Part shown: positions 30,047-52,349 of the stretch, piece by piece
How positions within the stretch are numbered: position 1 is the first letter of the stretch
How the letters are laid out: every line of letters starts with the position of its first letter
From: Dimorphilus gyrociliatus
Taxonomy: Eukaryota > Animalia > Annelida
DNA: 64,000 nucleotides
Direction: 5' to 3'
Assembly: GCA_904063045.1 (NCBI GenBank)
Contig: CAJFCJ010000012.1
Span: 1,178,001 to 1,242,000 of the forward strand
Notes under the pieces: generated by a model
Seen by the model: the letters and a program-made list of their open reading frames with translations, nothing else
Databases searched by the model: none
What the model was told of the DNA's origin: nothing
Program-made: the position numbers and the translations under genes

Positions 30047-31631
30047 CTACTTGTTGTACATCATTTTAATAAATTCTGCACGGGGATAAGACAGGGAAAG
30101 GTAATGTAAAAAGGAATAGATGAATGATATAGTTTAGAAAAAAAGGTTTAAGCAAGGAAGACCTTTTTTTTTCTTAATATTTAGATACCTTCGTAATTAA
30201 TTTTTCCATCTCCGTCCTTATCTGCTGATTTAATCATTGCTTTAATGTCTTTTTCATTTAATTTTTCACCAAGATTGTTCATTGTGAGGCGTAATTCTTG
30301 GGCATCAATAACTCCATTACCATCAATATCGAATACTTTGAACGCCTGACGCATTTCAGCTTCCATTCGCCTTTTTTTAGCTTCTTCATTGTTGCCACTG
30401 CCAATCGTTGTGCGTGACATCATCCTCAGAAACTCGTTAAAGTCGATTGTTCCGTTACCTGTTATTGAACCCATGTTAAAAAGGGCATAGCATTTAATCA
30501 TAGTGTTTTCATAGGATATAGGAAGAGCACAGTGTCACAGAAACATGCAAATGTAACTTATTAATGTAAATAGTAAGCTAAAGCAGTAACGAGAGGAAGC
30601 AGAGAAACAACAACTTAATGCACTTTGCCAATGATTTTACTAATCCTTCCAGTTTTTTCTTGGAGTATATATCTTCTATAACGAGCTGTAAAATGTTGAA
30701 TTAGCTTACAAAAAACCGTAGATGGCGCTTTAATCAAGCATCTTCTTTTAGGCTAAATACGGAATCATAATACTATACCTGGGACTTTAATCTATCTACT
30801 TTCTACTTGATCACAACACCGTAAATCTGTACCCCAAAAAAAAAATCAATTCAACCATAATGCGATCAAAAGAGTGTGCATTACACGAAGAAAAAACGTT
30901 GAAAAAAATCGGGTCATCACAAAAATGGTGCATAAACACAAATCACTGCCCTCGGGCGTCAACTGACCGTCTATATCGACGTTTTTCACCATGGAATGAA
31001 GCTCTTTCGAACTAAACGGAAGACCTAATGTCCGCATAACGTTACCCAATTCTGAGGCCGCAATAACACCGTTTTTATCTTGGTCGAACATGTCGAACGC
31101 CTGTTTTATATCTGTACATATTGGAAAAAAAGCGTTCTGAAAATATCCAGACCGGTAACAATCAATATAGAGAAATGGCTACTCGGGACGCCAACAAAGC
31201 GTCAAATTATGGTAGGTTTTTGGCTGTGATTTTTTTCTATTCCATTTTAAGAGAACATCGTGTTGGAAGAAAAGCTTTTTAACGAAAGCGTATAGATTAT
31301 CGATAGAGCCTTTCTTTCGTCCTTTTTTTCTCTCTCGCTCAGAGATAAATTAAGGGCGATTCTGCCCAAGAAAAATTGAAAAACCTTCGAATAACAAGGA
31401 TTTCTTCATTTCTCTTTGCCTTTAAACTCTTGATTACATGAAACCCTGCAGAATGTAGCCAGAGAAAGTGAATTTAGCTAACGTACCTTCGATTGTATAG
31501 CCTTCGGGAATGGATGGTTGGTTAGGAGCCTTCGCCATTGCTGGTCTCGCACTATTTGACGTCGTTAGTGGCGCAATTCGAGCGTCTGTGATGACGTCAC
31601 TTTGGTTGGGGCTAGTAGCAGTTTGTGGGGG
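30047..31631 (-). CDS. Calmodulin-like module 5 (C-terminal)
   Basis: PEGYTIE|[25 protein letters not shown]|[31 protein letters not shown]|EFIKMMYNK*. Confidence 0.92.
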
Positions 31632-34600
31632 CTGCGTAAGGAAAAAAATATGAAAAAAGGGAGAAAATTTGCTGAAAGAAGTGATGTAAAAATTATTAAA
31701 TAAAAAATTCTGCCTAAATCAATTAAAATATTGATGAAATCTTGGATTTCAAGATAAATGCTACAAGAATATATATATAGAGTATGATATATTCAGTAAA
31801 TCTATATGAAATATGTATTAAAAATATCGATGTTTATATATATATATATTTACATATATATATATATAAATACATAATTTATATATACTATATACACTAT
31901 ATACAATTCATAGCGTAAACTGATAGTATAATTTTATATAATCGAGTTAATTCTATACTATTCAAAAGTTTTACTGTATTTATATAATTAATAATATTTA
32001 TAAAAAGTTGTTATTTTTAACAACCACTAATTATATTGCTCTTGTTTTTATTGTATCCAATTTATAGGCTAAATGTTTTTCCCGTCTTTTTTTATTCATT
32101 TAGAACAACTTTTTATCATATTAGTATATATATATATATATTTATATGCCATATTTTGATAGCATTCATTTCCAGATTGTAAATCTATAGATATATGCAT
32201 ATATAAGTTTATATATATGCGGATGTTAACGGTAATTGGTTAAGTCCTCCATCACACAATAATCCCTTTACAATAGGTGTTACTATTTTTAAGCAACAAG
32301 AGAGGCTAAAATATAATAAGGATTAATATCTATTAAGTTTTAACTTTAACTATAATAAAACAGTTTTACAATCATCTGCACTAAGATTAAGTAACGGCTT
32401 AAAATGTTTTCTCTTTAAGAGGGATAAATTTCGATTTGGTTTGGGGTCAGAGTGAAAATTCCCAAGATATTAATTAATAGCTTTATCTAGTACAAAACAC
32501 TTGATATTAGCATTCGTTATCAACGAAAATTTATACGTTGTTTTTATTAATTACTAATTTTAAACTATCGCTTTCACCTAATACCAGTAACATATACTCG
32601 CTCTACTGTATCCTATTGACCAAAATACTTTATATTGCTTTTACGATATATTAGATTCTATATAATAATAATAATAATAACTATCTAGAAAGTATAATAT
32701 GTACGGAATAGGATAAAAATATAAATATGTGTGTAAATAGATTAAAAAAGGAATATGTAATAAATATAATATATATGTATATATGCTAAACATGCTTAGG
32801 GGTCGATACTGCATCTGTCAAAGTAATCAATGCGCCAAGCACGTATAAAGGAACGGTGTAAGAGTGCAATGAAGACTAGGTAGTATTTGTGATAAGCTAT
32901 AAAAATCATTCAACAACGAAATTCGAAATAAAAAATATGTAGCATGCTTAATTGAATTTGAGCCGCGCCTGTTAATTTTCTAAACTCAATTACATAAAAA
33001 TGGCTGCGGCGATTGCGTTTCGAAACAAATTATTCGGCCATTGATTCGGTAGAGGGAGTTCAGTTAGTGGCGAAAATTCCCTCGTGAGTGTCAATTCGCT
33101 AAACTTATTAAGTTTATTTACTAGGTCGTCGGGACCGAACGTTGTGACCGAAGAGGAAAAAAACGTGCGCTTTTATGCATTCGCTCTAACGTAATTTTCG
33201 TCTCCGAGAGCACATTTGCGAAGGCCTTCTTTAAATAGAACTATAAACCAAGGTTCCTTTTGAAGGCTTTTCGCCATATATACAACAAAATCTACTACGG
33301 AAACAATACAAAGAGAGGAAATATATTTTGACCTACCAAATAAGGTTCTTCTTCCAGACAGGACTGGCATTATTTAATTTAAAATTTTTGATCAATTCAT
33401 GGTAGAAATAGGAGAATGTGAAGAAAAGTAAACAAAGTACAACATATATAGACTATTTTACCATCACCCCTTTTGCTAGTGTTTTGCTTCTCTCTCTCTC
33501 TTTCGCTCTTTCTCTCTCTTTCGCTCTCTCTCTCTCTTTCACTCTATTCACTCTCATTGCCCTCTTTCCCTCTTTCATAGACACACACACGTTTCTCGCT
33601 CTCTCATAACCTACTTCTCACTATCAAGATAAATAATTGTACTACGGGTTTACTATATACGTTAGCGTGACAAAATCAGAATTTGAGCCGTTTTCTCCGT
33701 ATCGAGCGTGCAGGAATAGCAACGCTTTACGACTTCGTTTCATCTCATTAGTGCCTAGTCCCTTTCATCTTTCAACCGGCTTCCAATTATTTCTCATCCA
33801 AAATTAAACATTAATAAATTCTTACCAATATAAATTAAAAGAGAGTGAGCAGTTGTAAGGAGTTGTGGACGAAGGAGATTTCAAAAAAGGCATATGAGAA
33901 GGGGAATAAGGGATAAAGCATTTTCTTTACGCTTTTTCGCCCGCACCCGAAGAGAATCGATTTAAAGTTTATCGTGAATAAAAATCGATCGTCTCCTACC
34001 CTCGATAGACAGCTAAGGACGCTGTAGCCTCTCCCCTCTATTCCTCCTTTCCACCCCCCGGGCAGGGTTATATAAAATATAAACAGGAGGAAACCAAAAG
34101 AAAACAATAAGATTGGTCTTTTTTTAAAAGTAGGATCTCCGAACCGAACACTGTCCATTCAGGCGTACAGTTCGTTTCGCTGAATAATTTCGACTTGCTT
34201 CCTTTCTTTCTTATTAATATTTCTCGCTCTTTTTATAATTCATTTTTTTTTTAATAAAAATTTTAGGTAAAAACAACGAACTACGAACACAAATGAACAT
34301 GCTCAGCCATTCGCACGCGCACGAATTTGAGGTATTTATGTATTATCTTACTTAATACATATATGCCTCGTACACGCCTAAATATACTGTTTATATTTAA
34401 TGTAATTAGCTTTTCGAGAAATAGATATGCTTACCGGAAGTGGTTCTAAGGTGATTGGTTTAAACTTCCCTTGAAACATTTGCGTAAATTCTGTTAGAAA
34501 GGAAAAGAAAAGAAAAATTATACTGTAGGGAAACGTATAAACGATTATTTATAAAGCTACGTTACGCCTATGAAAGCATTACTGACAAGTCTTTCCTGTC

Positions 34601-37600
34601 CTACAGCAATACTTTTGACTATGATAAGCGAAATTTATAGTATGTAACATGGTTAAGCTTTCATGTTGTTTAATATAAGTGCACTTCAAGCCAACTGCAT
34701 ATGCAATAATTGCTGTGCCAGTAACAATTCAAGTCAATAAGTAACTACAATTTAGCGTATTGTCGCGATTGTCATAACGTCAGTTTCTATTTTTCTACGT
34801 CGCACTGGTGAAGCCGGTTGTAGTACAAACATTCAACGTCTGCCAGTGCAAACAAGAGGAAAAATGCCAATAGAAGAGCAGTTATATATATGCTAGTTCG
34901 TCAATCGATGAAACATACGAAACGGCCCAGCGTAAGGTTGTCTTAAACCGCAACTCCGACGCCGCCACCAACAACAAATGCATAATATATTTTCAGTACC
35001 TTTATAATTAATTTTTCCATCGCCATCCTGATCGGCTTCCTTTATCATTAATTCAACATCATTAAGTGTTAATTCTATGCCTAGTTCCTTCATAGTTTGC
35101 CTAATTTCTTCAGCAGTTATATAACCCGATCTGTCTTTATCGAAAACCTGTCAAAAAACGTATTAGCAATTAATAGATATTTAAAATATACGGTAAGTGT
35201 ACTATTACACATTATGAAATAAACGCTGTCACGCTCTGGACAGACGCTGATAAGCTATAATATTATTAGAATCATAAATCATAATAGAAGCGTTAGTATA
35301 CAAACATCCGAGCATTGGTTTAATTGGTAGAGAGGGAAGAGAGGACAACACACGTAAATAAAAGAAACAATTTATAATAACCTTGAAAGCCCTCCAAGCC
35401 TCTGGTTCAGTTGGCCTTGTATCAGCAGATGAACTCGATTTCCGACGGTCTCTTTGAGACATCATATTGATAAACTCATCGAATTCAAGCATTCCATTTT
35501 CTAAATAGAGAGGATTAAAGTTATTTTCATTAATCAACTTAAAAAACTTGTTGCTATTTATATTCCCCTTCCATCCCCCGCAGTATAAAACACATACTGT
35601 CAAGGTCAAATTTTTTAATCATTCTATCGATTAGCTTCTCATCCTGAGATAATCCCAGAGTTCGCATCACAGAACGTAATTCTACACCAGAGATGGCGCC
35701 ATCCCCGTTTTTGTCGAACAACGCAAACGCCACCTTTAGCTCTGTAAGGAAATTATTAATATATAAGAAAACCTACTAAAGTTTAAATGAGAAGTTTAAT
35801 TGAAAAAATTAGTTTATAGCCGATAATACCTTGCATTTGACTATCACTTAAACTCCCTGACTCAGGAATAGGCTTAATTACCTATGGATAAAATGTGATG
35901 CGAAAGTATAATTAATCGGATTTTGAGAATGTGTGGCTGAAACACACCTGACCAAATACTATGCGAACAAATTCTTCGTAATAAATTCGACCCCCTTTTT
36001 TGACGCCCGCCGAAGCCATCATGGCGACAAGGTCATTCTCTGATAACTTCATTCCTAGCTCTTGCATTGTTACCCTTAGCTCCTTATCATCTATATAGCC
36101 ATTTTTGTCTTTATCGAATACTTTAAAGGCTGCTCGCATTTCTTCTTCTTCCGCCCTGTGGCAATAAATAACCTATAATGAAGAGTTTATAAAATGAACG
36201 AAGTAAATAGAGCAAGAAACCGTTCGACGTAATTGCATACATGCATAGAAACATGTTAGTACGAAAGAAAAAAAAAACTCATTTTCTACGTTCACTTAAA
36301 AGAAACAAACTAAACCAAACGTCCAAATAGACATGAAAAAAAGATATAGTAACAAAATGATGCACAAAAATATTTTTCTGTTTGTATCACAAGTACTGTG
36401 AGCCTTTTAGTGCATTTAGTTATTTTTTTGTCTTTTTTAGATATATTTTTTTTAATGGATGTCACATACTACCTCAGCTGTCGACGGCGTCGTATTGAAG
36501 ATCTGACAAAATGTTGTAAAAAAAAAAAAAAAAGAAAAAAAGAAAGAAATGGGTAACAAAAATTAATTAAACAGAGGATATTAAAAGAAATTGGAAAATA
36601 ATAGAATCCTTTAAAATCTTATTTTCTTTCTTTTATTATCTTCTTTTTTACATATTATAGTTAATAGTTTTAGTTCTTTTATAATTATTACTATTACAAT
36701 ATTTTTTATTTTCTTTTTTTTTTACTTATGAATAAAAGAAGAGTAAAAGTTTTTGGATTAAGCAATAGAAATAGATTATATATATATATGTTTATGTATA
36801 CGGGAAAATAGGCAAATAAATAATACTGAATCCGTTTTTTTTCTTCCCCCATTAAAAATTAAATAACAAACCTTCTTTCCTGACGAGTTATTGCTGCTAA
36901 TCCTTTTCTTTTCCTCATCATTCTCTTAAATTCTTCGAAATCAATGGAACCATTTCCATCTAAATCTACTTTTTTCATCATTCGTTGTATCTTTAATGAA
37001 GAGAAAATAATAATCTAATGCACTCTTTGTTTCTACTTATATATACTTGTTCTGTAGATGTATCCATGCCTAACTGCTTGAAAACTTGTAACAACTCTTG
37101 CGTATTAATTACTCCATCTGCATCTTTGTCAAACATCATAAAAGCTATCCGCAACTCTATTTAAATTGACGAAAAGCAGGTTAACGCTGTATAGTACACA
37201 TATAATAAAGTTAATTTTCTCACCTCTTACTTCCGGATCTTCATCTTGAGGCTCATCAATACTGTCTCTTGAAGTAGGATCTATATTTTCTAACGCCTTC
37301 CTTTGCATCTGAAAAGTCCAATACATTTTAGTCTGTAAAACTCACCTAGCTTTACCTAGATTGTTTAGACATACGTTTGAAAGGTTAAATTAAAATTAGA
37401 AGCCAGCTCTAGTCTGCTAGTGTTACTTTTTTATTCTTAAACAGCTATTTTATTAAGCGTAACGAAGAAAACAATTAGCCGCACTTCATTTGTTTGTAAG
37501 GACTTACTTTCCTGTGTTCTCTTCCGATTTTGCCACTCATCATCTTAACAAAATCTGTAGAGAAATAAGGTTAAATTTTAGTAAAGAGTCTATGATTTCC

Positions 37601-39000
37601 TGCTTCGTTATTTTTTAACATCTGGTAAAAGAATTACCGTTCCATCAAAAAAAAACATAATTTATAAAATGTCAAAAAGAGGACAATAAATTTCAACGAT
37701 TAACTGTAGCCAGAAAGTAAGAGCGTACTAAATACAAGCCAAACAAAAACCTAGCGGCGAACTTTACAGAGATGAGAGAGAGAGAGAGAGAGAGAAAGAG
37801 TGAAAAAAATGAGTAAGTGAGTGAGAGAGAAGGGGAGAGAGAGAAAGTAAGCTTCTTGCATTGCATCGAGATGGTGCAACATACACGAGCTCGTAATAGA
37901 ATTAAGGCAAATGTATGGTTCAAAAACGAATCAATTAATACACGTCGGAGGAAGTGCGATGGAAATTGCACTCGTGTCGGAGTCAATGACGGCATGATTA
38001 ATTGAATAAACAGGCTACCGTCAAAACTTCATACCTTCGTAATAAATTCTGCCGGATATTAGGACCCCAGCTTCTTTCATCATCTGCTTTACATCAGCAT
38101 CGGAAACAGGAGTACCCAGTTCTTGCATAGTTCGCTTGAGTTCTTTCGGGTCGATATATCCGTTCTGGTCATGATCGAATGCGGCAAACAGCTGCCGAAG
38201 TTCCGCTTCCTCCGGCCTCCGTTCTAATCGCTGTTCCATCATACGAACAAATTCTTCAAAGTCTATTAGGCCATTGCCTGCAAAATACCGAAGAAATTTT
38301 GTCATTAATTACCGAGCCTCATGAATCGATACTTTGTAGTTTACTCGTTCTATATAATTAACTCAGGCTGGTCTACAAAAATCGTTACAGGACGAGAAAA
38401 TATTGCCCAGGTACCAAAGAGGTGATTACCTGGGAAAAGTGAAGAAAATGAACAGATGTGATGCCGGCATAAAATAACACGCAGTAGATAGAAGCATACA
38501 GCCTTAAGTATTATATGATAACTCGGTACGTAATACTATGAAATGATCCGTTTAAAATAAATGTATAAAACTGTTAACCTCACCTTGTATAAAAAAAATA
38601 TCACATTATTGATAGTACACCGGAAACGTACTTTTTCCTTTTTAACGCAAGGACAATTGTGTCGTTTAGAAGAGTTACTAAATATAATATACAAGAACAG
38701 ACGTTTGTTAGCCGATGATTGGGCGAATTCTGCCGAGAAATCCCGTGCATAGGCGCGCCAGGGAAAATCCTTGAAGGTAATTACTATATATATATATATT
38801 TTTATATTTATTATATATATATATATTACATATTTTTATATTTATATATATGTTAGTTTATTTTCTTAGCTGCTGTATGATAGATTTTTTTTAACCGGGT
38901 ATATATAGATATACTGTTTATATATATATATATAAATCTGGTATTTATTTATATATTTATATATTTCCATTGATAATAATATAATTTCATCTAAAACAAG

Positions 39001-39042
<42 letters not shown>

Positions 39043-42000
39043 GTACATTACCAAAAAAAAAATTTGCAGTATATGACAGATTTTACAGTGCATTTGCTGT
39101 GTATTCATCTAAAAAGCGATTGTCTCATTTCTTACTAGAATTTGTATGTTTTATGGACGCCTCATTCTCTTCGTTGTTTTTTTTTTTTTGCACACTGCGG
39201 TATAGTGTATAGCATATTTTTCTGTACAAACAATAAGCCCAGAAGAGTGTCTAATAAGGCCGTACACCCCTAGGCGATCTCATCTCGAGCGGTCGAGCTT
39301 TCGTCAAAGTACTCAACCAACAGCCATTCGAATTCCTTTAGAACAAATGAGCTAAACTCAAAATACATTTTATATCGCCACCAGATCTGCATAGGATGAC
39401 GAAAGCAAATTGGCGAATTACGGTTAGTTGCGAACGGAATACATTTCGAGGCTGTTAGGCTTGCTAAGTCAACGTCGTTTACTTTATACATTAAGAATGA
39501 ATTCGTTGATACTTATACAATTGTACAAGATATGACTTACATCATTTCTTTCTATTAACGTGTACAAGTGCAACTTACCATCTAAATCTACTTGTTGAAA
39601 GACCTCGCTTAGCTTTTGATCAGTTATCGGTTGCCTCATAGCGTGCATAACAGTGCTAACTTCTTGCTTGCTGATGAAACCATCCCTATCCTTGTCAAAC
39701 AAGGAAAAAGCAAGTTTCAACTCTGTTGAAAATATAAAAAAAAGAAATAATTAATTTAACGTTATAACATAGATGGCAGCTCTGTAGCTTAATAACATAA
39801 ATTAGAGAGTAGAATTATCCTGAATGGTATAATAGGTTCGGCAAGAAAAACAGAATACAGAGTAACCATGTTTAAACTGAAGGATCAAATCTCGTGTAAT
39901 ATAATAACAGATAATAGATAAGCACACATACATGTACAAACAAACACATAGTAACAGGCATGCAAAGAGTGCTACAACCCTTATCAACGAGTAGCGTTCA
40001 ATATATTATACAAACTAATTACAAGCTACTAAGAATAACAATTAACATTTAAATATAGCATATAAGTGTAGTTATAAATTATTCATCAAGTTTTTTTCTT
40101 TAGCAATTGCTTACGCTTGTGGCATCGTCTGCCCTTTCTGACCATTTCTTCGTCCATGATTCAAACAGTCTTCTTAATAACATCTTAGGCAACTCGTTAA
40201 GTTCACTGCTAGGTAGCTACGGTTAGTTTAACACTGCATATGCAATGATACCCCCTTTACATTTAGAGTGTACGCTATGGTCGTATCAATCAATCGTGCG
40301 TGGACAACGCGTTTTACATAGAATCCACTAAGTCCCAGTAGAAGCTAAAAATTCGTCCGCTGTGGACCGGAACAAACTTTCCGCTCATTCACCTCCGCTG
40401 TATAACGTTAGTCAAATAGAAAAGGGAAATAAAGGCGCCAGAATTTACCGAATATATAAATATACAATGTACAGGACCTATTGTATATATTGTATATTTA
40501 TACAGCTTATATAATACATTTTTTGATATTCAGTAAATATAACGCATATAACGCATATAGTGATATATATATAGAGAGAGAGAGTGAATCTATATGATAT
40601 CTTTCTCAATATCCTCCTAATACATCGTCCGTTATTTATAAGCGTATTCTCTATATACTGTGTATATACGTATTTTTATACGCGGAAATATAAATATAGC
40701 TACAGCATCTGCAAGCCTTTAACCCAGAAACAGTCATGTGATAAAAAGAAAGTGCACTACTGATGTAAGAGTTGAATTCTAGGACTTAACAAGCTTCTTC
40801 TCCAATATTCTGAACATTAACTTAAAGAGAAGTAGAACGATCTTACCACGATAAAGCATCTTTTAATAGTAAAAAGAATCGTCCAGCTTATATTCTCACG
40901 CTAAATTTCACCTCACAGTGAGAGTGTAGTAGCTTTTAGTACTGCCGTATAGTTTACTGTGCTCAGTATAATGTGTTGGTTTTATAAAGATTTAATCATT
41001 ATATAGTATACATATTCACACATGTATATATATATAAATATCTGCTTGTGCTATATAATATTCTTTGCAGTCTCCATTTGTATTTTGCATTATTAATTAG
41101 CGCAAATTAATCCCTTCTAAAACTGCTTTCTATATTTAGTCAGTAGACCGTTCTTTGGCATCGATGCCCAATTGCAATGGAAGCAAATTTTCTGTATTAT
41201 CAACACGATTCCGGGGCATTTGGGTATTCGATTTCCGGATTTGTAGTTATGCTAATCCTAGCTTTCATTCTCACTCAACGTTACGAAAGAAAATTCGCGA
41301 CGGCATACTAACAATTAGTTATTCATTATTAAGTAGCAATAGTAATGAACGTGAGTTGAGCGGGGGTCTTTTCGCTTTTCCTTTTCATATTTGTTTGTAA
41401 TTTGAAAAATTTTAAATAAAAGGAGAAGCACGTGACAGAGCAGCTAGAGCATTGTTAAAACACAAAAAAATTTATAATGAGACGAAAAAGACAAAATAAA
41501 AACTGAGACTATGACTAGAACGGTAAACGTCAACGTAGCATCTCTATAATGAGAAATACGATATAGAGATAGAAAAGAAATAAAAAGACAGTTTTTATCT
41601 AAGGATTATTCAGCAAATGATGACACCAATCATCAATGCCGTGGGCGTATTTATACCGTTAAAAGATATAATTAACAAAAATGATAAAACGAGAATACTT
41701 ACCGGCTTTTTGAGTCTTCGAAAACTTATCGTTGCCCTGCGGAATAAATGAAATTATGCCTGCATTATTCATATAAACACTTTTATTTATTTAATTTCTT
41801 ACTATAACAAAATTAACAATAAGTTAAAACTACTCATATACTATCTTAGAACCTTGTACGTTTAAAGTCCCAACGAAACCCCTCCTATACAAATTATTCA
41901 TAAATCCATGACGCAAGGATATAGCTGTATACACACGCTCAATATATGTATATTGTACTCTATATATAAATTTATATATATATAAATGTATACATATATA

Positions 42001-45000
42001 CGTATATACCCAGTCAATGTACAGGCAAGATTTATTAAAAGTTATTAATTTTCTGTTTACAAAATATGCTGATTATTACGCTTAAGCAAGTTTTAGCCCT
42101 CCATGGTGCGATGTAACAGATTACGTCTGACAAATATTCTCACGAGATACTGCTTGTGACAAACTACGTTAACACTGACGTCATAAAGACTCGCAACTTG
42201 ATATGTCATCGTTTTCTTCAACGAAAGCGTGAACAATACAAAAGAAAAATTTTTCCCTTTACTGTCAACTAAGAAAATTGTAACAAAACACTGTCATTTC
42301 TAATCGCCTTATCCGCTTAGGCTTAAATGTTTTCAGTTACTCAGAAAGTTCCAGTCGAAGCACACATACATTATTAAGAAAAAAGATGACCTTGGCTGCA
42401 AGCCACCTAAATGTCCTTAAAACATAAAATTCAAAGAGAAGACGGAAAGCTGGAGAAGTAGAAAGGATAAGAGGGCGTATATATGTGTGTGAGGCAGAGC
42501 GATAGAGATAAAGAGAAAAAGAGAAGAGGTAGGCAGGGTGGCACAAAAAGAAGGAAGAAATAGAAAGAGATAAATAAAAAAAGGTGGAAAGGGTATGTGA
42601 TGAGAGAAGAAAAAGATGAGAAAAGAATTTATTTTCGTTTTCCTTTTTTCTTCTTTTAAAACTCATTTTCTTCCTATCAAAAAAATATTCCACCAATCGG
42701 AAGCGCCCGACATTTACCCGAAGCGATAACTTCCAACGTTGTCGGTGTTTTTTAGCAGTAGTGAAAGAACACATATTTTCTTATGTAAGAGTAGAAGGAA
42801 TGGGAGAGAAAGAATATTTATACATATCGCTGTTTATATATATATATATATACTGTATATAAGTATATATATATGAATAGATAGAAATGAGACCATTTCT
42901 ATATTCTGTTTATTCGTTGTATGGAGCGGATTTCGTGCTTTTTTATGCTAGTAGTCAATAAATACAAAACAGCTCTTAAATGTTGTCCTTAAAGATTAAC
43001 TTTTTTCAGCTGATTATAAAGAACGAAAAAGAAAAAATAGAACCTCTTTATAAACGTCATCGAAATATATAGATATAAATATATATACCACTTATAAAGT
43101 GTTAAAATTCTGCCCAAATCTGATTTTCACCAGATAGGCTACCAACGCTTCCAGCTATAATGTCGCTTTACTAGGGCAAGTTCCCCATTATAGAAATTAT
43201 CCGAAACTTCATCTACGACCTAGATGTTAACGTTTTAGAGAAAAAAAGTGAAAAAAAAAAAAAGATTTCCAATAGCTGTGTAGCTCTCTAATTTAATTAT
43301 GGGTAAATCGACCGGGTATTTAACACACATTTTACTTAATTCAAAGACGAGGATGTACTTTAATCTAATAATACTTCCGAACAGTTCCTGTCTGTGGTCA
43401 AATAAGATAGAGCGTATACAATTAAAAATTAATTATACAACTACTAGTGCAAAAATTTCACGCAACGAAAACTCCTACTTACATAACATCCAACTTAAAA
43501 TTGATTATACTTACTAAAGTATCGTTATCCAATGTCTGCGAGAATCGATCCCTCATCATTCTCATGAACTCTGAAAAAAAAGGGAGAAAATCACATGATT
43601 CTGTCGTCGGAGCGTCTACATTGTGCGAATACCGATCAATAGATGCATCTAGAGGGCATTACTGTATACTATCTTGCCAAATATCATTTATGGTACGGAC
43701 TCTTAGTAAACATAGTTTATAATTAAGACAGCGGCACAAACCACCTTTAATCATTTAACTGAGAGTGCTTGTAGATAAAGGTATATTTTTTGGTTGACTA
43801 TTAATAAATGTGACAAATAAGGCACCTATACAGTAACACCATAACGGATTAAGAAGAAGACACGAACGTAACTATTTTCAGATAATTATCAGAGTGCTTA
43901 TTGATTATAGAAACCAAAGTAACCATAGCTAACTTAGTATTTCGGCTTCGAACAAGAATGGGTTGATACTCTTCAGAAATACAATAATAATTTACATATA
44001 ATATATTAAAACAGTTATGAAAACAAAAAGTTTACTTTTCGCTATATTGCAACGATACACTTAATAAAGGAGTCTCTATAAACTTGCACAGTAGAGACAT
44101 CTGCAAGGATTGTAAAGCATCCCTCAAAAAATAATCTTGGTCAGTAAAAAAAGAAACGAAAGGGCATTGATTCGTATCCAGGGCAGCAATTTCTATCTTA
44201 TAAAAATTAATATACAAAAGAGTTGTAGAAGAGGCGTATGAATAAAAAGACAAAATTTTAGATACTACTTTGGCTGGTGAGAAAATCAGTCAGGACGTCG
44301 AAGCCTGTTATTTATTTGTATTCTGATTGCGAATTCGTTTGGCGTCAATTTGCAACCCTAGCGTCTAAATATAGCTGAGAAAAGACTATATAGTTACCGG
44401 TATAGATTTGAATAGCAATAAAATAAAACGACTCCGTTAGGGCATAATACAATAACCAGAAGTAAATCAATTTAACGCTCAAACCTCTTATGAGTCAGAA
44501 GTCAAGCAAACGCAATTGAATCATCCTTGCAATTCGTAATGGCGTACCACAAGAGCTACTCTTGTAATTTCAAGAAAAGATTACAACAATCTATGAAGAT
44601 GCTAACTATTCCTTCCTCCAAAGCAAGTAAATTCGACTAATACTATCAGGAAAGACATAAGGAAAAATAAATAAGTAAAAATCAGACCACCCGCTACTAG
44701 ATCCTCATTTCCAAACAAAAATCTACAACTAAAAAGTTAGAATAATACAAGAACAAAAACAATATGAAAGTGAGCAAAGGTTTTTCTTACATCAAGCTGG
44801 TTAAGTATAAAATATATGAAAATACGCAATTATTTAGTATATATGTAGATGATGATATATATCTGTATAAATTTTATATTGCATATATATATATATTACC
44901 CATTCTATATATATATATATATGCAGAATATATATACATTTAGGATTGCGGGAGGCAGTATGCACATATATACATATATATATATTTGCCGCTTGTTCCA

Positions 45001-48000
45001 CATATTGTATATATATTTATTATAAACAAAAATATGCTTGTGCATTAACGTATGCACTCTCAGTTCCGGTGTAAACTCAACGGGAAAATTTTATTTCATG
45101 TTTATATTATCATAGACCTAAATATCCTGAGTATAATTATCATTTTTCCACTGTCTCCTTAAGAAGATTGGGATTAAATTTTATATTAGTAGGAAGAATT
45201 TCTTTAGACAGTCATCCAAAACCTAAAATCGTTGAAATAGAGCTACTTAACGGGTAAGCGGTTTCATCGATGAGGATCAACTTAAAGGGTAACTACATCA
45301 AAATATGCCATTACGATTGCGCATTTTTTTATTACGATTACTTCTCCAGTAAAAAGCGTAATACTCCGTACATAATTGCAAATTCATATACCGATTATTC
45401 ATTTAACGCAACAGCTCGTTAAGGTTGAAATAAGCCAACTAACTACGGCATAGGAAATAATTGCTTATTCCTAATTCGTTAAGTGGCGGTAAAGGGTTTT
45501 AGGAAAACAAGAGTACAGACAAACAATATCAATTGCCATATTCCGTAAGGCAGTGAAATCAATAAGTGAGCTTAGAATCTTTAGATATTGGACAATGATT
45601 GTAGTATGAAAAGCAATAGAAAACCCTACAAATTCTCGCTATTTGCATTGGCTAACATTTAGAGTGAGGAAAAAAAATGACAATAGAATTAAAACAAACA
45701 CGTTTTAGGCAAATTGGCGAGATAGAAACGAGGGGTAGGAGGGGTTTTGAAATTAGGTGCAGGGATCCAGGGGAGCAGAAGAGGGTAAAGATAAAAAAAA
45801 ACCTCTCTTGGGAGTCTTAGGTGTACTCTTTGGAGTATTCTTCGGAGTATTTTTTGCGCTCCTCTTCGGTGAAGCATCCTTTCGACGAGCTGGAGAAACA
45901 GCTCTGAGTAATCCGCACAAAGCCATAGACTGGCATGAACTGATTGGTGTCAGCAGCGCGTTTGCTGCTTCTTCTAAATGCCTCTAGCTTTACACGGGGC
46001 GGCGCTTTGCACGCTTTTACTTTTTCCAGCGCCTTGCGTAATTCTTTCCTCTTGATAGGAAATCGGTTGAATGATAAAAAATGACGAATTAGATAAATGA
46101 GAAACAACCAAATTTCCCTAATAAATTTTCAATGCAGTATGGAAAGACGGGTAAAAAGGGAAACACTGTAGTAAAGAACGATCGAAGAAAAGGAGAGAGA
46201 AGAAAGAAATGATTGTGGCTCCCCCCGCCCCATTCTCTATTAACTACCCAAGCAGCGCTATAGGCCGTTTATTTTTAGACCTTATTTCTTTCATCCCTCG
46301 TCCTATAAAACTTTCACTCGTCTACAGAAATATTTCCAATAATTAAACTGATCAAATGATTTGTTAAGATGGCTGCTGCCGTCACGTGATTAGATCGATG
46401 AATGATGCTATCCCAACTATAAAATAACGTTTAAATATGAAAAGGCTGAAAGATGCAGCGCTACCTACGGGGAAGACAGGTGCAACTCTAATAGGGTAAG
46501 CAAGTCAATTATTCACGAAGAAAGTGACTCCTTGATTTGCACGCCATAAAAATCACTGGACATATTGTGACCTGAAGGGTTTGTTTTGGACTTGCAAAAG
46601 CAACCACAATTATGGCAAGCCGGCGTTATTTCATCCTGTTTCAGAATCGATAGGGCAAATAACGCTTCAATATTTATTTCGTATCGTTTTGCAGTTGATT
46701 TCCTCTAAATATCTCGTGTAAATATTACGCACGCGACCTACATGCATACGAAATTGCGGATTGGTCGTTTTCGGACGGTTTAATAGGCCTATAAATTTCA
46801 ACTGGCGCTGACGGGCAGCAGTTTGTTTTCCCTTCTACTATCTAGGATTTTTACTGCCTTTGACAGAAGCGCGATTTTTATGTCAAGTGTTCTGTTTTAA
46901 ACCGTAGGTATAATATATCCGACATTTTTAGAGTGTGGCGTGCTTACAATGAAGTAATTTGCATCCTGTGCATCACATTGACAAAAAAATATACATACAA
47001 AGATTTCATTCTCAAGTTGTCATCATCTCCAAAATTGTTTTCCGCCCTTCGTTTGTTGATATCATATTCTGTTTTATACTATTAATTTGGCCTACCTAGA
47101 TATACACAGAAGTTTTTCATATACTTATATATATGGTAAATATATGCACACACACACTAAGTATACAATGTATATACTGTATTTTATATATCTATATCTA
47201 TAAAGCTTGTATTGTTGATTTATTTATAAGATATTTATAAAATTTATGAATTTTTCCACCTTGATAATTCCCTTTTATATTTTCACCTAATATTCACTAT
47301 TATCGTATCTCTAACTAGATAACTGTTATTTTTTGGTAGTAATATTTTACACAGCGGCGATTTAGACTGTTAGTGGTCCGTTTAAGGCAATTTATCAACG
47401 CTTCACCAAATTTAAATTCCCAAACGCTGCTTTAATCATACGACATCAATAATTAAACTCCAAACGATTTTATCTCGCAACAATCAACACATTTCTCTAC
47501 TATTTATCGAACTGCTCGCCTCATTCCACTGTTCGATATTCATTAACGAACGTGAAACGCTTATAAAAGCCATTCGAAAAGGGATATACAGTTAAAATAA
47601 AAACTGTCAATAACAGTCTACTACAATCTAATAACATCCGGTTTTGCATCGACATTATACAGATATTCAATGTCATTTGCATATCGACGGTGAAAACTGT
47701 CGCAAAACCGATCCGTAAACATACAGCATGTTGGACGAATAACAGCAACACAAAGCTGTATAGTATTTTAGCGCTGTCCTATGAAACGTTCCTTTGCGCA
47801 CGTGCCTATATTGACAAACTACACAAAACGAAAATTGATGCAAACTCTAGCCAGAGTGTGAACAATATAGTCAACTACAAAATCCTCTAACTTTTACGGA
47901 GGATAATTGAAGAACAAGACTTTCTTTTTCTTCTAAAGCAATCACCACTCACCTCCGTAATTAATTTTTCCATCGCCATTCAAATCGGCTTCCTTCACCA

Positions 48001-48885
48001 TTATATCAACTTCTGCCTTTGTTAACTCCTCACCTAGCCCTTTCATTGTTGTAAGAATATCGTCCCCATTAATATAGCCATCCCCATCTTTGTCGAAGGC
48101 ACGGAATGCTTGAAGCCATTCGTCCTCAGCCGATTGCATCAACCTCAAATCTTCCATTATTTCCAGAAATTCACTTAGTGTAATTACTCCGTCTCCTGAG
48201 CGAGTTAGGTCAATGCCAAATTTTCAGGGTGCAATAAGTGTGTTTCGTTTTTTTTTTTGTTTTTGTTTTTTTTAGATTTGTTTAGTTTGATTAGAATAAA
48301 AAATAGTGAGAGATACAAAGCATGCATATAGAGAGTATTTAGCAAATTCAGTTGGGGTTAGAAGGCAGTCATGAAAGAAAAAATGGCAATTTTCAGCTTC
48401 ATAGCAGAATGAAAGTTATATAATGAAACAAATACCGTCTACATCCACTAGATCAATCATTTGCTTTATATCTTCCTCTGAAAAGTCTTGACGTAAACCG
48501 TGCACGACGGTACTAAGTTCATCAGTGGTAATTTGCCCATTGCCGTCTTTATCAAATACGTTAAACGCTTCCCTTAGCTCTGTAGGCGCAAAAAAAAAAC
48601 ATAAAAGCTGAGAAGAAAACGTCTGGCGTGGCCCGTGGCTAAAAAAGAGACGCTATAAGAAGAAATATTGTCTTTTTAGACGCTTCGTTACTCATTTCCT
48701 GTTTTCTCCTAAACACGATTCAGACGGAAGACTCAATCCTGTTAGATTGTTGCAAACTATCCTAACCCTAATGATTGAGCAGTTGTAGCCAGGATAAAAA
48801 ACCTTACCAGTGCCTGGATTTGTAATATAAACTTGCACAAACCTTTAATTTCAGCTTCGGTAAATGCGTTACGAATGATATCATC
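30047..48885 (-). CDS. Multi-EF-hand protein made of five tandem calmodulin-like modules (at least 870 aa; start exon not pinned down)
   Basis: 22 exons, every junction GT-AG and in phase: 48843-48885, 48436-48579, 47953-48195, 43515-43570, 41703-41736, 39579-39722, 38035-38277, 37508-37554, 37224-37308, 37047-37156, 36872-36990, 36473-36502, 35948-36155, 35830-35881, 35598-35741, 35382-35500, 35000-35147, 34435-34490, 31487-31631, 30968-31111, 30189-30458, 30047-30075 (2613 nt, TAG at 30047-30049). Only module 5 is followed by a stop on this path. Confidence 0.85.
33337..33370 (-). CDS. Candidate alternative first coding exon giving a single-module (158 aa) isoform
   Basis: [14 protein letters not shown]+G|GTAGGT, 34 nt, phase 1, compatible with the acceptor at 31111; flanked by a CT/GA-rich tract. 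Confidence 0.5.
34435..35881 (-). CDS. Calmodulin-like module 4
   Basis: SLSDSQMQE|[24 protein letters not shown]|[11 protein letters not shown]|[25 protein letters not shown]|[19 protein letters not shown]|. Confidence 0.9.
35948..37308 (-). CDS. Calmodulin-like module 3
   Basis: DPEVRE|[43 protein letters not shown] (30-nt microexon 36473-36502)..[33 protein letters not shown]|. Confidence 0.9.
37508..41736 (-). CDS. Calmodulin-like module 2
   Basis: [12 protein letters not shown]|[24 protein letters not shown]|[32 protein letters not shown]|[16 protein letters not shown]| with phase-0 donor. Confidence 0.9.
37638..37658 (-). CDS. Candidate alternative first exon giving a three-module isoform
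   Basis: MFFFDGT|GTAATT, phase 0, compatible with exon 37308 (which itself starts with ATG); GA/CT tract at about 37770-37845 upstream. Confidence 0.4.
39010..39040. repeat. (TA)n microsatellite (one of many, e.g. about 20654-20675, 26852-26876, 28403-28427, 29537-29566)
   Basis: Directly visible. Confidence 0.9.
40115..40157 (-). CDS. Alternative first coding exon giving a four-module (711 aa) isoform
   Basis: [14 protein letters not shown]+C|GTAAGC, phase 1, compatible with acceptor 39722; an in-frame TGA two codons upstream of the ATG shows it cannot be an internal exon. Confidence 0.6.
42176..42183. promoter_or_regulatory. Full CRE (TGACGTCA) upstream of the internal start exon at 40157
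   Basis: Sequence match only. Confidence 0.35.
43515..48885 (-). CDS. Calmodulin-like module 1 of the penta-calmodulin gene
   Basis: FTEAEIKE|[24 protein letters not shown]|[31 protein letters not shown]|[19 protein letters not shown]| followed by a GTAAGT donor, not a stop. Confidence 0.9.
45753..45926 (-). other. GC-rich intronic small ORF or possible exon encoding S/T-P-K repeats ([42 protein letters not shown]...)
   Basis: Open frame with 9-12 nt tandem repeats; only a weak donor (G|GTTTTT at 45802). Coding status unproven. Confidence 0.3.
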
Positions 48886-49964: not shown

Positions 49965-50800
49965 TAACCTTTATACAAGCTCTCCCCTTACAAATAAATG
50001 CAGGCCTTGAATAATAGTTCTTATAAGAAATTTCTCATAATGGCCCAAAAATCATGGGTTTATACTCGATAGTAATTATATTTATTATGCAATAAAGTCT
50101 ATTAATGCGTTCAGTTACCTTAAATATACGAAATCGAAACTGCAATTGCAAGTTATTTCGTTTGAATCTACTCCCAAAGTGCAACTCGCTGGTACGATTG
50201 CCCATTATTCACTGAAAAAAAAATTACAATGGTTATACTACTCTGTAAAAGGCTATGTAGTTTATTATCTAAGAGAAATTTAGTTCAATTTAGCACATGC
50301 CTCATGTCTATGGATTTTTTTCATGTGTGTAATGTTTCTGATGTGTCTGTAAATAAGTTCATATTATCGTGTTACAATACATTTTTAGCAATCATTAGGA
50401 CTACTTATATATGCATTAAAGAATCCCAATTGTCCAATACACGTACAGGAAAACTTTACTGACTATCAACAAATATTTATAAGCTTTTAGGACTTTATAA
50501 ATTACAAAATAAAAAAGCTATAAAAGTCATACTCTAAGCATGCTCGCTCTAAGTAAGGTTCTTAGCACTTTATTTAACTTAGAAGCTAAACGAATGAACG
50601 TGGAAAAGGTACCAGTCTTTTTTCAGTAGCATGGTCAAATGTTCAGTTGCTACTTGAAAAATTCGTATTATGGAAGAGGAGTCTTACCTTCCAATTATTG
50701 AAACATTAATAATAATCAGCTTGCTAACCAGTCGTATTTTAAGAAGTCGTGTTTAATAGTTGGCTTTTTAAATTCTTTACTACGAGAATAACCAAGTAAA

Positions 50801-51526
50801 ATGGCGGAAATTGCGCGGGAATCAGACTGGGAAGAAAGGGGGAATTTAAGTGAGAGAAGAGACGATTCAGAAACAAATAATGATGAAATTTCAACCAGGA
50901 AAGAGACGTTGAAAAGGTGCCGGAAAATTTTGAAAAACCTATGCGAATGCACTCAAAAAACTAATCGAATCGATATAATAGGAAATGGTTCTGTACCAAT
51001 GATTTACGAATTATTATCAAAATGCTTAATATCTAAGAAATTGAGTGCCAACGAAGAGGAGGGAAATAGCATAAATTGCTTCGTTTTTGATACAAAAATC
51101 CATTTTCGCTTCGAAAGATTACTGGAGACCATTAAAGAAAAGGTGGACAAAAGCGAGACAAATAAAATCTCTTCTCTTCTTGAGAAAATAACTTATTTAG
51201 AACAAGTCGTTACGGAACAATGGATTATAGGCTTTCATGGATGTAAAGAAAAAATTTACATGGACGAAACTATTGGTCTATTGATCATTTATTCTATTCA
51301 TCCATTCTTCAAATACATTGATTGCATATCGGATATACTCGATGAGATTGCTGAATTCATACCAGTTATTTGTATGTTAGATTACGAAATGCCACCCTCT
51401 TGGTCATTACCGTCCAGTTTATTCCATATTAAGGTTGATTGTAATTCAAACTTAGAAATAGAATGTAAAAGTTGTAATAAAATTAAAAAATATCAGAGTA
51501 CTAGCAAAACAGCAATACACTTTTGA
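50801..51526 (+). CDS. XRCC2: Divergent RAD51 paralog, XRCC2-like, intronless (241 aa)
   Basis: By-eye alignment to XRCC2 as I recall it: [14 protein letters not shown] ~ [37 protein letters not shown] ~ [41 protein letters not shown] ~ SLCLLILDSLSAFYWID. Good start context (AAAATGGCG). Needs HMM confirmation. Confidence 0.62.
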   Translation: [241 protein letters not shown]

Positions 51527-51590
51527 ATTGCAGACGACGGAAACTAGTGTTTTATTTACTAACTCCACAGATACGGCTATCGATTAAGAT

Positions 51591-52349
51591 ATGGAAGCAA
51601 GATTACTAGAAGCTAGTGAACATGGTGATCTAAATACAGTGATTAAACTCTTAAAAAAGTTACCTTTAGTTCAAGTAAATTCTCAAGATGCTTCTGGTGA
51701 TACCGCATTAATAAAAGCTTGTCGAGGCACGTTAAGTTGCTCTTTCTCTAATATATTCATATGTGTAAGAAATTTGTCATGAACATGAAATATAAACCAT
51801 ATGCGATTTTATTTCAGGGGGACATTTTGATATTGTGAATGAACTTTTAGACGCCGACGCCCTTGTCTCAAGTAAAAATAAAACTTCAACAACAGCCCTT
51901 CATATCGCTAGTTATAGTTAGTATAAAAAATTTAAAAAAAGCGAAAATATTTTTAATAATTGTTTATCAATGAAAAACTATGTGCTTCTTATCTATTAAG
52001 ATGACGATCGGAATCTTGTATCGAAGCTGATTTTAGCCGGTGCTGACCTAAATGCTAAGAATAAAAGCGGTTTTCGACCACTTGATTTATCCGGCTTTAA
52101 TAGCAACAGTCGGACGGTTTTATATAACGCAGACAGGTTAAAACCATATCTCTTCCGATTTAAGAACAGTTTTAATTTCTAAGCCATTCCCTCTCTACTG
52201 ATATAAACAGAGGTATTAAACCCGTGTTGCCAGAACCGATACAAGAGGTTCCATCTATCCCAAGCCACGCCTTAATCCCAAAGAAAAAGAAGAAAAAAGG
52301 TAAAACAAAAGGTAAGAAATCAAAGAAAGGAAAAAAGAAAAAGAAGTAA
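51591..52349 (+). CDS. Small ankyrin-repeat protein with poly-lysine C-terminal tail (169 aa)
   Basis: Exons 51591-51726, 51818-51916, 52001-52136, 52211-52349; GDTALIKACRG|GHFDIVNELL, TTALHIASY, GADLNAKNKSGFRPLDL ankyrin motifs; tail PKKKKKKGKTKGKKSKKGKKKKK*. First intron is best modelled as GC-AG. Confidence 0.88.

What the first reader, a model, noticed from the sequence alone, without database searches (positions are those of the whole stretch)
30047..48885. Penta-calmodulin: five complete calmodulin-like modules concatenated in one reading frame (20 EF-hand positions)
Seen: what looks in the ORF track like scattered calmodulin fragments chains into 22 in-phase exons. The exons completing modules 1, 2 and 4 (EFMRMM.., DFVKMM.., EFTQMF..) end in strong GTAAGT/GTAAGC donors instead of stops; module 3 ends at a GTGTGT donor. 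Dedicated linker exons each finish with a mimic of calmodulin's LTEEQIAE (FSKTQKAE, DPEVRE, LSDSQMQE, GYTIE/D). The modules are highly diverged from each other, so this is an old, maintained concatemer and not an assembly collapse. Inference: a multivalent Ca2+ sensor/scaffold or high-capacity buffer able to cross-link several targets.
Basis: partly seen in the sequence, partly recalled or inferred. Interest (0 to 1): 0.87.

Follow-up and report, generated by a model that had tools for sequence, protein, structure and literature searches.

The report
Five-calmodulin fusion gene, annelid family
A marine worm gene strings five calmodulin-like calcium sensors into one protein of about 100 kDa; RNA data confirm three of the four joins between units, and other annelids carry the same uncharacterised gene.

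Summary
On the minus strand, 21 GT-AG exons (48885 to 30047) join into one open 860-codon frame. It encodes five calmodulin-like modules that are 40-51% identical to each other. Eighteen EF-hand loops are canonical and two are degenerate.

RNA contigs from public runs carry three inter-module splice junctions: 37508|37308, 35948|35881 and 34435|31631. One 1859-nt contig runs across several modules. Differences between those RNAs and the window are 16 synonymous to 2 non-synonymous in this frame.

It rests on a linker conserved in the Owenia and Lamellibrachia orthologues. The ATG-bearing 5' exon was not found.

The gene is not unique. It belongs to an annelid family of 5-6-module proteins, two of them read from intron-free mRNA contigs. 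Modules 2, 4 and 5 group with the same-position modules of the other species, so the fusion is old. Scallop and amphioxus multi-calmodulins look like independent fusions.

Conserved calmodulin methionine pockets favour a multivalent Ca2+ sensor. That function is inference. I found no paper on such proteins.

The parts
48843..48885 (-). Exon 1 of the known part: N-terminal piece of module 1 (..AFTEAEIK). It starts at an acceptor and has no ATG.
   Evidence: AG/GT sites and phase. Not covered by the reads call.
48436..48579 (-). Module 1, EF1 to the first half of EF2 (144 nt)
   Evidence: EF-hand loop found.
47953..48195 (-). Module 1, second half of EF2 to the first part of EF4
   Evidence: Pfam EF-hand_7 E=1.6e-17.
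43515..43570 (-). Module 1 tail exon ([19 protein letters not shown]), donor GTAAGT
   Evidence: The tail is conserved in Owenia and Lamellibrachia. The junction to the next exon was not tested by reads.
41703..41736 (-). Linker exon 1 ([11 protein letters not shown])
   Evidence: Conserved as NGKFSPEQ in Owenia and NGAFTPHQK in Lamellibrachia.
39579..39722 (-). Module 2, EF1 to the first half of EF2 (144 nt)
   Evidence: Its sequence appears as the loose end at 36971 in RNA runs X5, X7 and X10.
38035..38277 (-). Module 2, second half of EF2, EF3 and degenerate EF4
   Evidence: The X10 loose end at 37556 reads into this exon's 3' end.
37508..37554 (-). Module 2 tail exon ([16 protein letters not shown]), donor GTAAGT
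   Evidence: Joint 37308|37508 in X5 and X7, and with one changed letter in X10.
37224..37308 (-). Linker exon 2 ([15 protein letters not shown])
   Evidence: Joints 37308|37508 and 37156|37224.
37047..37156 (-). Module 3, EF1
   Evidence: Joints 37156|37224 and 36990|37047 in X5, X7 and X10.
36872..36990 (-). Module 3, EF2 and central linker
   Evidence: Joints 36990|37047 and 36154|36871 (the cut can also sit one place on).
35948..36155 (-). Module 3, EF3, degenerate EF4 and tail (..[10 protein letters not shown]), donor GTGTGT
   Evidence: Joint 35879|35946 (cut +2) in X5 and X7.
35830..35881 (-). Linker exon 3 ([17 protein letters not shown])
   Evidence: Joints 35879|35946 and 35741|35830.
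35598..35741 (-). Module 4, EF1 to the first half of EF2 (144 nt)
   Evidence: Joints 35741|35830 and 35500|35598.
35382..35500 (-). Module 4, second half of EF2 and Ser-rich central linker
   Evidence: Joints 35500|35598 and 35144|35379 (cut +3).
35000..35147 (-). Module 4, EF3 to the first part of EF4
   Evidence: Joints 35144|35379 and 34490|35000.
34435..34490 (-). Module 4 tail exon ([19 protein letters not shown]), donor GTAAGC
   Evidence: Joint 31631|34435 in X5 and X7.
31487..31631 (-). Linker exon 4 (48 codons, Pro/Ser/Thr-rich, ends GYTIE)
   Evidence: Joint 31631|34435. RNA depth stops exactly at 31631.
30968..31111 (-). Module 5, EF1 to the first half of EF2 (144 nt)
   Evidence: The length of X7 contig 21 fits its inclusion.
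30189..30458 (-). Module 5, second half of EF2 to the first part of EF4
   Evidence: Best solved relatives are calmodulins, E about 1e-30.
30047..30075 (-). Last exon (EFIKMMYNK, stop TAG). This is the only calmodulin-like C-terminus in the gene.
   Evidence: The C-terminus is conserved (EEFIQMMYAK) in P0153.

Best explanation
This is one minus-strand gene. Its known part has 21 coding exons (48885 to 30047), and at least one unfound 5' exon lies above them. It encodes a protein of at least 860 residues made of five calmodulin-like four-EF-hand modules joined by 13-56-residue linkers. It belongs to an annelid family of 5-6-module calmodulin-like proteins. I infer that it arose from a tandem array of calmodulin-type genes. 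Modules 1, 2, 4 and 5 keep the same intron positions, including an identical 144-nt exon. I read each linker exon as the former N-terminal exon of the next unit. It is now reached from a donor that replaced the previous unit's stop. The likely function is also inferred. Each module binds 3-4 Ca2+ and opens methionine-lined pockets as calmodulin does. One molecule could then hold up to five targets, or one repetitive target, in a Ca2+-dependent way.
For: The exon chain is open and all sites are GT-AG. RNA contigs show joints 37308|37508, 35879|35946 and 31631|34435, plus all intra-module joints between them, with CT..AC ends. These are seen in X5 and X7, and the first also in X10. X7 contig 21 (1859 nt) runs through modules 3 and 4 and past both ends of the laid stretch. 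RNA depth in each bin equals the exon share exactly, so the contigs show no unspliced signal. Window versus RNA differences are 16 synonymous to 2 non-synonymous in this frame, for each of two lineages. The gaps between modules 2, 3 and 4 are only 199 and 66 nt, too small for separate promoters and 3' ends. Only module 5 ends like calmodulin. Among homologues, P0153 and P0154 (1029 and 1032 aa) align end to end with the model at 41.5% identity. The P0153 contig is an intron-free mRNA with upstream stops. Lamellibrachia P0156 and Owenia P0008 share linker 1, and P0235 shares linker 2. Module clades by position have ultrafast bootstrap / SH-aLRT support of 100/97 (m5), 98/92 (m4) and 98/93 (m2). 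Calmodulin's pocket methionine positions are kept at 33 of 45.
Against: An ATG lies in frame 36 nt upstream of linker exon 1. A four-module protein plus a separate module 1 gene is therefore not excluded. The start codon and 5' exon are unknown, and a candidate at 50205-50119 is not held by any RNA run. The RNA runs come from relatives or strains whose laid contigs mostly match the window at 90-99%, not from the assembled individual. Contigs drop rare isoforms, so internal-start or early-terminated forms cannot be ruled out. No protein-level or Ca2+-binding data exist. The m1 (81/40) and m3 (92/67) clades are weakly supported.
Confidence: 0.85

Rival explanations
1. Module 1 is a separate single-calmodulin-like gene ending ..[16 protein letters not shown]. 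The fusion gene then starts at ATG 41772 ([18 protein letters not shown]..) and has four modules.
For: An in-frame ATG lies 36 nt upstream of linker exon 1, and a read-through stop lies 11 codons after the 43515 donor. The junction was not covered by the reads call. The X7 contig length (480 nt beyond 37554) fits either model.
Against: Linker 1 residues on both sides of the proposed junction are conserved in Owenia and Lamellibrachia, whereas the read-through tail and the MNNAG extension are not. The donor is a perfect GTAAGT and the acceptor has a pyrimidine tract. X5 contig 17 runs 1042 nt beyond 37554. That fits modules 2 and 1 plus about 135 nt. The alternative is an unlikely 5' UTR of about 650 nt (my arithmetic).
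Confidence: 0.1
2. This is a tandem cluster of five independently transcribed calmodulin-like genes, and the in-phase donors are coincidental.
For: In-frame ATGs lie in or just upstream of every linker exon. Read-through stops follow within 11-17 codons of the four inter-module donors.
Against: Three inter-module splice junctions are present in RNA contigs of two to three runs, and those contigs show no intron signal. The gaps of 66 and 199 nt leave no room for promoters. Orthologous mRNAs encode the fused protein. PolyA-like hexamers occur only at background frequency.
Confidence: 0.02
3. The fused protein is real but acts mainly as a high-capacity cytosolic Ca2+ buffer or store (about 18 sites per molecule), not as a target-binding sensor.
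For: It has 18 canonical loops, is acidic (pI 4.75, 168 Asp+Glu) and shows fairly high k-mer depth in X5.
Against: Calmodulin's target-pocket methionine positions are kept at 33 of 45, and the positions matching Met72, 109 and 124 are kept in all five modules. Conserved position-specific module identities and two conserved non-binding EF4 sites are not expected for a plain buffer.
Confidence: 0.25
4. It is a polyprotein precursor, as polyubiquitin is, cleaved at the linkers into five different calmodulin-like proteins.
For: The repeats are head to tail. Linker 2 holds basic clusters (REHRKMQRK).
Against: No cleavage motif is shared among the four linkers. The linkers differ in length (13-56 residues) and in sequence. 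No known protease acts on calmodulin fusions in this way. No data speak for processing.
Confidence: 0.05

Closest known systems
Calmodulin (CALM/CMD-1; solved structures such as 1cll)
   Same: Each module has four EF-hands in two lobes and is 41-52% identical to a calmodulin-type protein (P0315). The best solved relatives are calmodulins (E about 1e-30). Most pocket methionine positions are kept. I recall the 144-nt EF1-EF2a exon and the intron before the EF1 helix as matching calmodulin genes. That point is from memory and was not tested.
   Different: There are five modules in one chain of at least 860 residues instead of one module of about 149. EF4 of modules 2 and 3 has lost its Ca2+ ligands. 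The central linkers of modules 3-5 are 8-9 residues longer.
Annelid 5-6-module calmodulin-like proteins: Lamellibrachia satsuma 'putative calmodulin-like protein 2' (P0156), Owenia fusiformis unnamed protein (P0008), and mRNA-derived P0153/P0154, P0152, P0002, P0151
   Same: The modules are colinear. Module clades by position are well supported for m2, m4 and m5. These proteins share linkers 1 and 2, the degenerate EF4 motif (AGV..RIYYEDF) and the C-terminus.
   Different: P0153 and P0154 have six modules. Their first two are copies of the type-2 and type-3 modules and they lack the window's type-1 module. Owenia has a 306-residue non-EF N-terminal region and its model breaks off in module 3. 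The Lamellibrachia model carries a repetitive insert that looks like a prediction artefact.
Multi-calmodulin proteins of other phyla: scallop Ylistrum balloti LOC132543579 (818 aa), Mytilus galloprovincialis (850 aa), amphioxus and sponge three-module proteins
   Same: They are head-to-tail calmodulin-like modules in one predicted chain. The scallop protein aligns over its whole length with the model at 34% identity.
   Different: In the careful tree the scallop and amphioxus modules fall outside the annelid clade, beside single calmodulins. In the quick tree the Mytilus, Haliotis and sponge modules do the same. They look like independent fusions.
Sea-urchin LpS1/Spec proteins (eight EF-hands from an internal duplication; from memory, not tested here)
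   Same: They set a precedent for doubling a four-EF-hand unit within one polypeptide.
   Different: They have two units, not five. I made no sequence comparison, and a paper search for LpS1 returned nothing relevant.

Membership tests
Calmodulin / calmodulin-like EF-hand proteins | EF-hand pair domains recognised by profiles | tested here: met
   PF13499 EF-hand_7 scores E 1.6e-17 to 6e-13 on exons of modules 1-5.
Calmodulin / calmodulin-like EF-hand proteins | Canonical 12-residue Ca2+ loops in all four EF-hands | tested here: inconclusive
   18 of 20 loops are canonical. EF4 of modules 2 and 3 lacks the ligands. EF3 of module 1 ends in Asp instead of Glu.
Calmodulin / calmodulin-like EF-hand proteins | One four-EF-hand unit of about 150 residues ending just after EF4 | tested here: not met
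   Five units lie in one 860-codon frame and only module 5 ends ..MMYNK*. RNA joints link the units.
Calmodulin / calmodulin-like EF-hand proteins | Methionine-rich target-binding pockets | tested here: met
   33 of 45 calmodulin Met positions are kept, and the positions of Met72, 109 and 124 are kept in all modules.
Calmodulin / calmodulin-like EF-hand proteins | Ca2+-dependent binding of target peptides | not testable with these tools
   This needs biochemistry.
Annelid 5-6-module calmodulin-like family (unnamed) | Colinear alignment over all modules | tested here: met
   Model residues 12-860 align with P0153 residues 169-1029 as one HSP at 41.5% identity. Multiple alignment.
Annelid 5-6-module calmodulin-like family (unnamed) | Each module groups with the same-position module of other species | tested here: met
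   Support is m5 100/97, m4 98/92 and m2 98/93, weaker for m3 (92/67) and m1 (81/40).
Annelid 5-6-module calmodulin-like family (unnamed) | Conserved linkers and conserved degenerate EF4 | tested here: met
   Linker 1 is shared with Owenia and Lamellibrachia. Linker 2 ([12 protein letters not shown]) matches P0235 (MMTGKIGRTHRK). The AGV..RI(Y/F)YEDF motif is shared.
Annelid 5-6-module calmodulin-like family (unnamed) | All modules on one mRNA | tested here: inconclusive
   Shown for modules 2-5. The module 1 to 2 junction was not covered by reads.
Tandem array of separate calmodulin-like genes | No splice junctions between units; each unit ends at its own stop | tested here: not met
   Three inter-unit joints with GT..AG ends are present in RNA contigs.
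Penta-EF-hand (PEF) proteins (sorcin, ALG-2, calpain domain VI) | Five EF-hands in one compact domain | tested here: not met
   This gene has five units of four EF-hands each. Only the word 'penta' is shared.
LpS1/Spec eight-EF-hand proteins | Sequence kinship with sea-urchin Spec/LpS1 | not tested
   No LpS1 sequence was fetched. Only a database label 'LPS1-alpha-like' appeared, on a fish protein (P0160).

The most novel reading that the evidence does not exclude
Annelids as distant as Owenia and Lamellibrachia share a family of 5-6-module calmodulins, which I could not find described. Each position has its own conserved identity, and two positions have a conserved Ca2+-blind EF4. Such a protein could work as a multivalent Ca2+-switched cross-linker that brings up to five targets together. 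That mode of calmodulin signalling has no studied counterpart.
Probability: 0.4. Interest if true: 0.65.

Novelty: new member of a known kind. Interest (0 to 1): 0.5.

Why it matters
Predicted multi-EF-hand proteins could be taken for gene models that wrongly merge tandem calmodulin-like genes. Here splice junctions in RNA, tiny inter-module gaps, purifying selection and position-specific orthology show that a five-module calmodulin is a real and long-kept gene in annelids. That gives a natural test case for how valency changes calmodulin signalling, such as cooperative target clustering or scaffolding. It also documents how a tandem gene array can become one gene by swapping stops for splice donors. 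In addition, it supports the orthologous models in Owenia and Lamellibrachia as real fusions, although both look imperfect.

Tried and rejected
1. I tried to find same-species or near-strain transcript proteins that would show the 1 to 2 junction and the N-terminus. The attempts were three word-indexed searches and one exhaustive search. They returned only a 75-residue genomic ORF fragment (P0006).
2. Two degenerate DNA patterns, one across the 43515|41736 junction and one for the module 2 EF3 loop, found nothing in JGI metagenome contigs.
3. I looked for the first coding exon. Candidates are 50205-50119 (MGNRTS..) and 49758-49729. No RNA run holds the first. The N-terminal regions of the orthologues have no match upstream of 48885, so there is no sixth module in the window.
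4. PolyA hexamers after each module occur at background frequency and are uninformative.
5. The loose end at 36971 at first looked like a module 2/3 chimera. I now read it as the module 2 mRNA cross-matching a 22-nt paralogous stretch of module 3.
6. Four paper searches for multi-calmodulin proteins found nothing relevant.
7. The ESM Atlas look-up added only generic EF-hand clusters.
8. Rfam and tRNA scans of the window were empty.
9. I did not fold the protein. The spliced sequence has no reference, and the tool returns no inter-domain error map that could show how the modules pack.
Full report
**What is in the sequence**

The window is AT-rich eukaryotic DNA, 27-42% G+C over 2-kb windows. 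Between 48885 and 30047 the minus strand carries many calmodulin-like ORF fragments. A loop search found 12 complete EF-hand loops there.

I read the minus strand in three frames around every fragment and set boundaries on AG/GT. This gave 21 exons that join in phase into one open frame of 860 codons, ending at TAG 30049-30047. All 20 introns are GT..AG.

The protein divides into five modules of 142-150 residues. Linkers of 17, 33, 13 and 56 residues lie between them.
- Pairwise module identity is 40-51%, and identity to a calmodulin-type protein is 41-52%.
- Eighteen loops are canonical.
- EF4 of modules 2 and 3 reads [12 protein letters not shown] and [12 protein letters not shown] and has lost the Ca2+ ligands.
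- The known part weighs 98 kDa, has pI 4.75 and contains no cysteine.

I count 21 exons rather than 22.

**Why sequence alone was not enough**

- An in-frame ATG lies in linker exons 2, 3 and 4. For linker exon 1 it lies 36 nt upstream of the acceptor.
- Each module-terminal exon, if left unspliced, reaches a stop within 11-17 codons.

A tight cluster of five genes was therefore a fair rival. Two features argued against it. The gaps between modules 2-3 and 3-4 are only 199 and 66 nt. Only module 5 ends as calmodulin does (..[10 protein letters not shown]).

**RNA evidence**

Twelve public runs hold parts of 34400-38350.

Joints found:

| Joint (+ strand places) | Modules joined | Runs |
|---|---|---|
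| 37308\|37508 | 2 to 3 | X5, X7; X10 with one changed letter |
| 35879\|35946 (cut can sit 2 places on) | 3 to 4 | X5, X7 |
| 31631\|34435 | 4 to 5 | X5, X7 |

- Every intra-module junction in between was also seen. All have CT..AC ends on the + strand, which is GT..AG on the coding strand.
- X7 contig 21 is one 1859-nt record that crosses modules 3 and 4 and runs past both ends of the stretch.
- The depth in each bin equals the exon share of that bin times the contig depth. For example, X5 shows 84.0 for the 85-nt exon in a 200-nt bin at depth 197.6. The contigs therefore carry no intron or upstream-of-acceptor sequence.
- X10's loose end at 37556 reads into the end of the large module 2 exon.
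- The loose end at 36971 in three runs is the module 2 EF1 exon.

The RNA comes from close relatives or strains; most laid contigs match the window at 90-99%. Of the listed differences, 16 are synonymous and 2 are not, in each of two lineages. The replacements lie mostly in linker exons. This is purifying selection in exactly this frame.

**What remains open**

The module 1 to 2 junction (43515|41736) lies outside the laid stretch. Support for it is indirect:
- The donor is a perfect GTAAGT and the acceptor is good.
- Residues on both sides of the junction are conserved. The window reads [15 protein letters not shown]|[13 protein letters not shown]. Owenia reads MMSRRF-SHSLDYTE-NGKFSPEQVADL. 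Lamellibrachia reads MQHRFIKSGQVLDS-NGAFTPHQKGEL. The unspliced alternatives have no counterpart in those proteins.
- X5 contig 17 extends 1042 nt beyond 37554. That fits modules 2 and 1 (907 nt) plus about 135 nt.

I put this junction at about 0.85.

The first known exon begins at an acceptor with a stop two codons upstream, so a 5' exon with the ATG is missing. Two candidates exist. The more interesting one is 50205-50119, which begins MGNRTS, a myristoylation-like start. No RNA run holds it. No further module lies upstream.

**Relatives**

An exhaustive profile search with the module 2 exon found 12258 EF-hand proteins. Many-stretch proteins ranked at the top. Follow-up searches and alignments define a family:
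- P0153 and P0154 (1029 and 1032 aa)
- P0152, P0002 and P0151 (818-886 aa)
- P0235 (894 aa)
- Lamellibrachia satsuma 'putative calmodulin-like protein 2' (P0156)
- an unnamed Owenia fusiformis protein (P0008)

P0153 comes from a 3363-nt contig with an uninterrupted ORF at 85-3174 and upstream in-frame stops, so it is an mRNA.

In a tree of 44 modules, all modules of this family form one clade (91/98), apart from single calmodulins and from the scallop and amphioxus multi-calmodulins. Inside it, modules group by position:

| Window module | Groups with | Ultrafast bootstrap / SH-aLRT |
|---|---|---|
| 5 | the last modules of five other proteins | 100/97 |
| 4 | P0153 m5, Lamellibrachia m6 | 98/92 |
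| 2 | six others | 98/93 |
| 3 | the type-3 clade | 92/67 |
| 1 | Lamellibrachia m1, Owenia m1 | 81/40 |

The concatemer therefore predates the split of these annelids. By published phylogenies, which I did not test here, Owenia is an early-branching annelid.

P0153 has six modules. Its first two are extra copies of types 2 and 3. The degenerate EF4 motif (AGV..RI(Y/F)YEDF) is conserved across species.

**How it probably arose and works**

This section is inference.

Modules 1, 2, 4 and 5 share three intron positions and a 144-nt EF1-EF2a exon. This points to tandem duplication of a whole intron-bearing calmodulin-type gene. I read each linker exon as the former N-terminal exon of the next unit, with its in-frame ATG left over from that past. 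The stop of the preceding unit has been replaced functionally by a donor.

Pfam and solved-structure searches place every module with calmodulin. Calmodulin's pocket methionine positions are kept at 33 of 45. This favours Ca2+-dependent target binding by each module, and so a multivalent sensor or scaffold. A buffer role is possible and is not exclusive of that. I see no sign of polyprotein processing.

**Known or new**

Orthologues and analogous fusions already sit in public databases, labelled 'uncharacterized', 'unnamed' or 'calmodulin-like'. Four full-text searches found no paper on multi-calmodulin proteins.

I class the gene as a new member of a known kind, namely calmodulin-like EF-hand proteins in an existing but unstudied multi-module family. 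The value added here is the transcript proof of fusion and the position-specific orthology.

Noticed in passing
window 50119-50205 (-): An ORF piece begins MGNRTSELHF.., a myristoylation-like MGxxxS start, and ends at a phase-0 AAG|GTAACT donor. It could be the missing first coding exon, which would make the protein membrane-anchored. Only X12, the run that also holds half the words of the gene stretch (probably DNA of the same species), holds it. No RNA run does.
   Followed up: partly
window 36128-36157, junction 36155|36872: In run X5 the contig downstream of this junction has twice the depth (387.7) of the upstream contig (197.6). In X7 a single contig covers both. This could reflect two haplotypes, 3' bias or a second upstream form.
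   Followed up: no
window 36950-36971 versus 39579-39600: Modules 2 and 3 share a 22-nt stretch with one mismatch (AAGTAGATTTAGATGG.AATGG) at the EF2 loop. This makes module 2 mRNA contigs cross-match module 3 as 'loose ends' in three runs.
   Followed up: partly
window 54101-54562 (-): Exons of a small GTPase (..YYKEAVGAFVVFDITRASTFEAVQKWKSDLDSKV.. and ..FETSAKENINIDEAARCLV) look like a Rab32/38/29-type gene, upstream of the calmodulin gene on the same strand.
   Followed up: no
window 50801-51782 (+): A 241-codon uninterrupted ORF is followed by a 63-codon ORF (..LLEASEHGDLNTVIKLLKK..). Both are on the opposite strand, about 600 nt from the candidate first exon, so a divergent promoter is possible.
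   Followed up: no
window 22001-24000: This 2-kb stretch has the highest G+C in the window (0.418) and strong strand asymmetry (GC skew 0.19, AT skew 0.24).
   Followed up: no
P0001 (Teleopsis dalmanni LOC119680298, 1219 aa): This stalk-eyed fly protein has about nine repeats of a calmodulin N-lobe-like half module followed by two full modules. It is a different kind of EF-hand concatemer.
   Followed up: no
P0156 (Lamellibrachia satsuma), about residues 455-630: The annotated protein holds a long run of GNGVIQFGVFGAVS-like repeats inside module 3. It looks like a tandem repeat or an intron read as coding sequence in the gene model.
   Followed up: no
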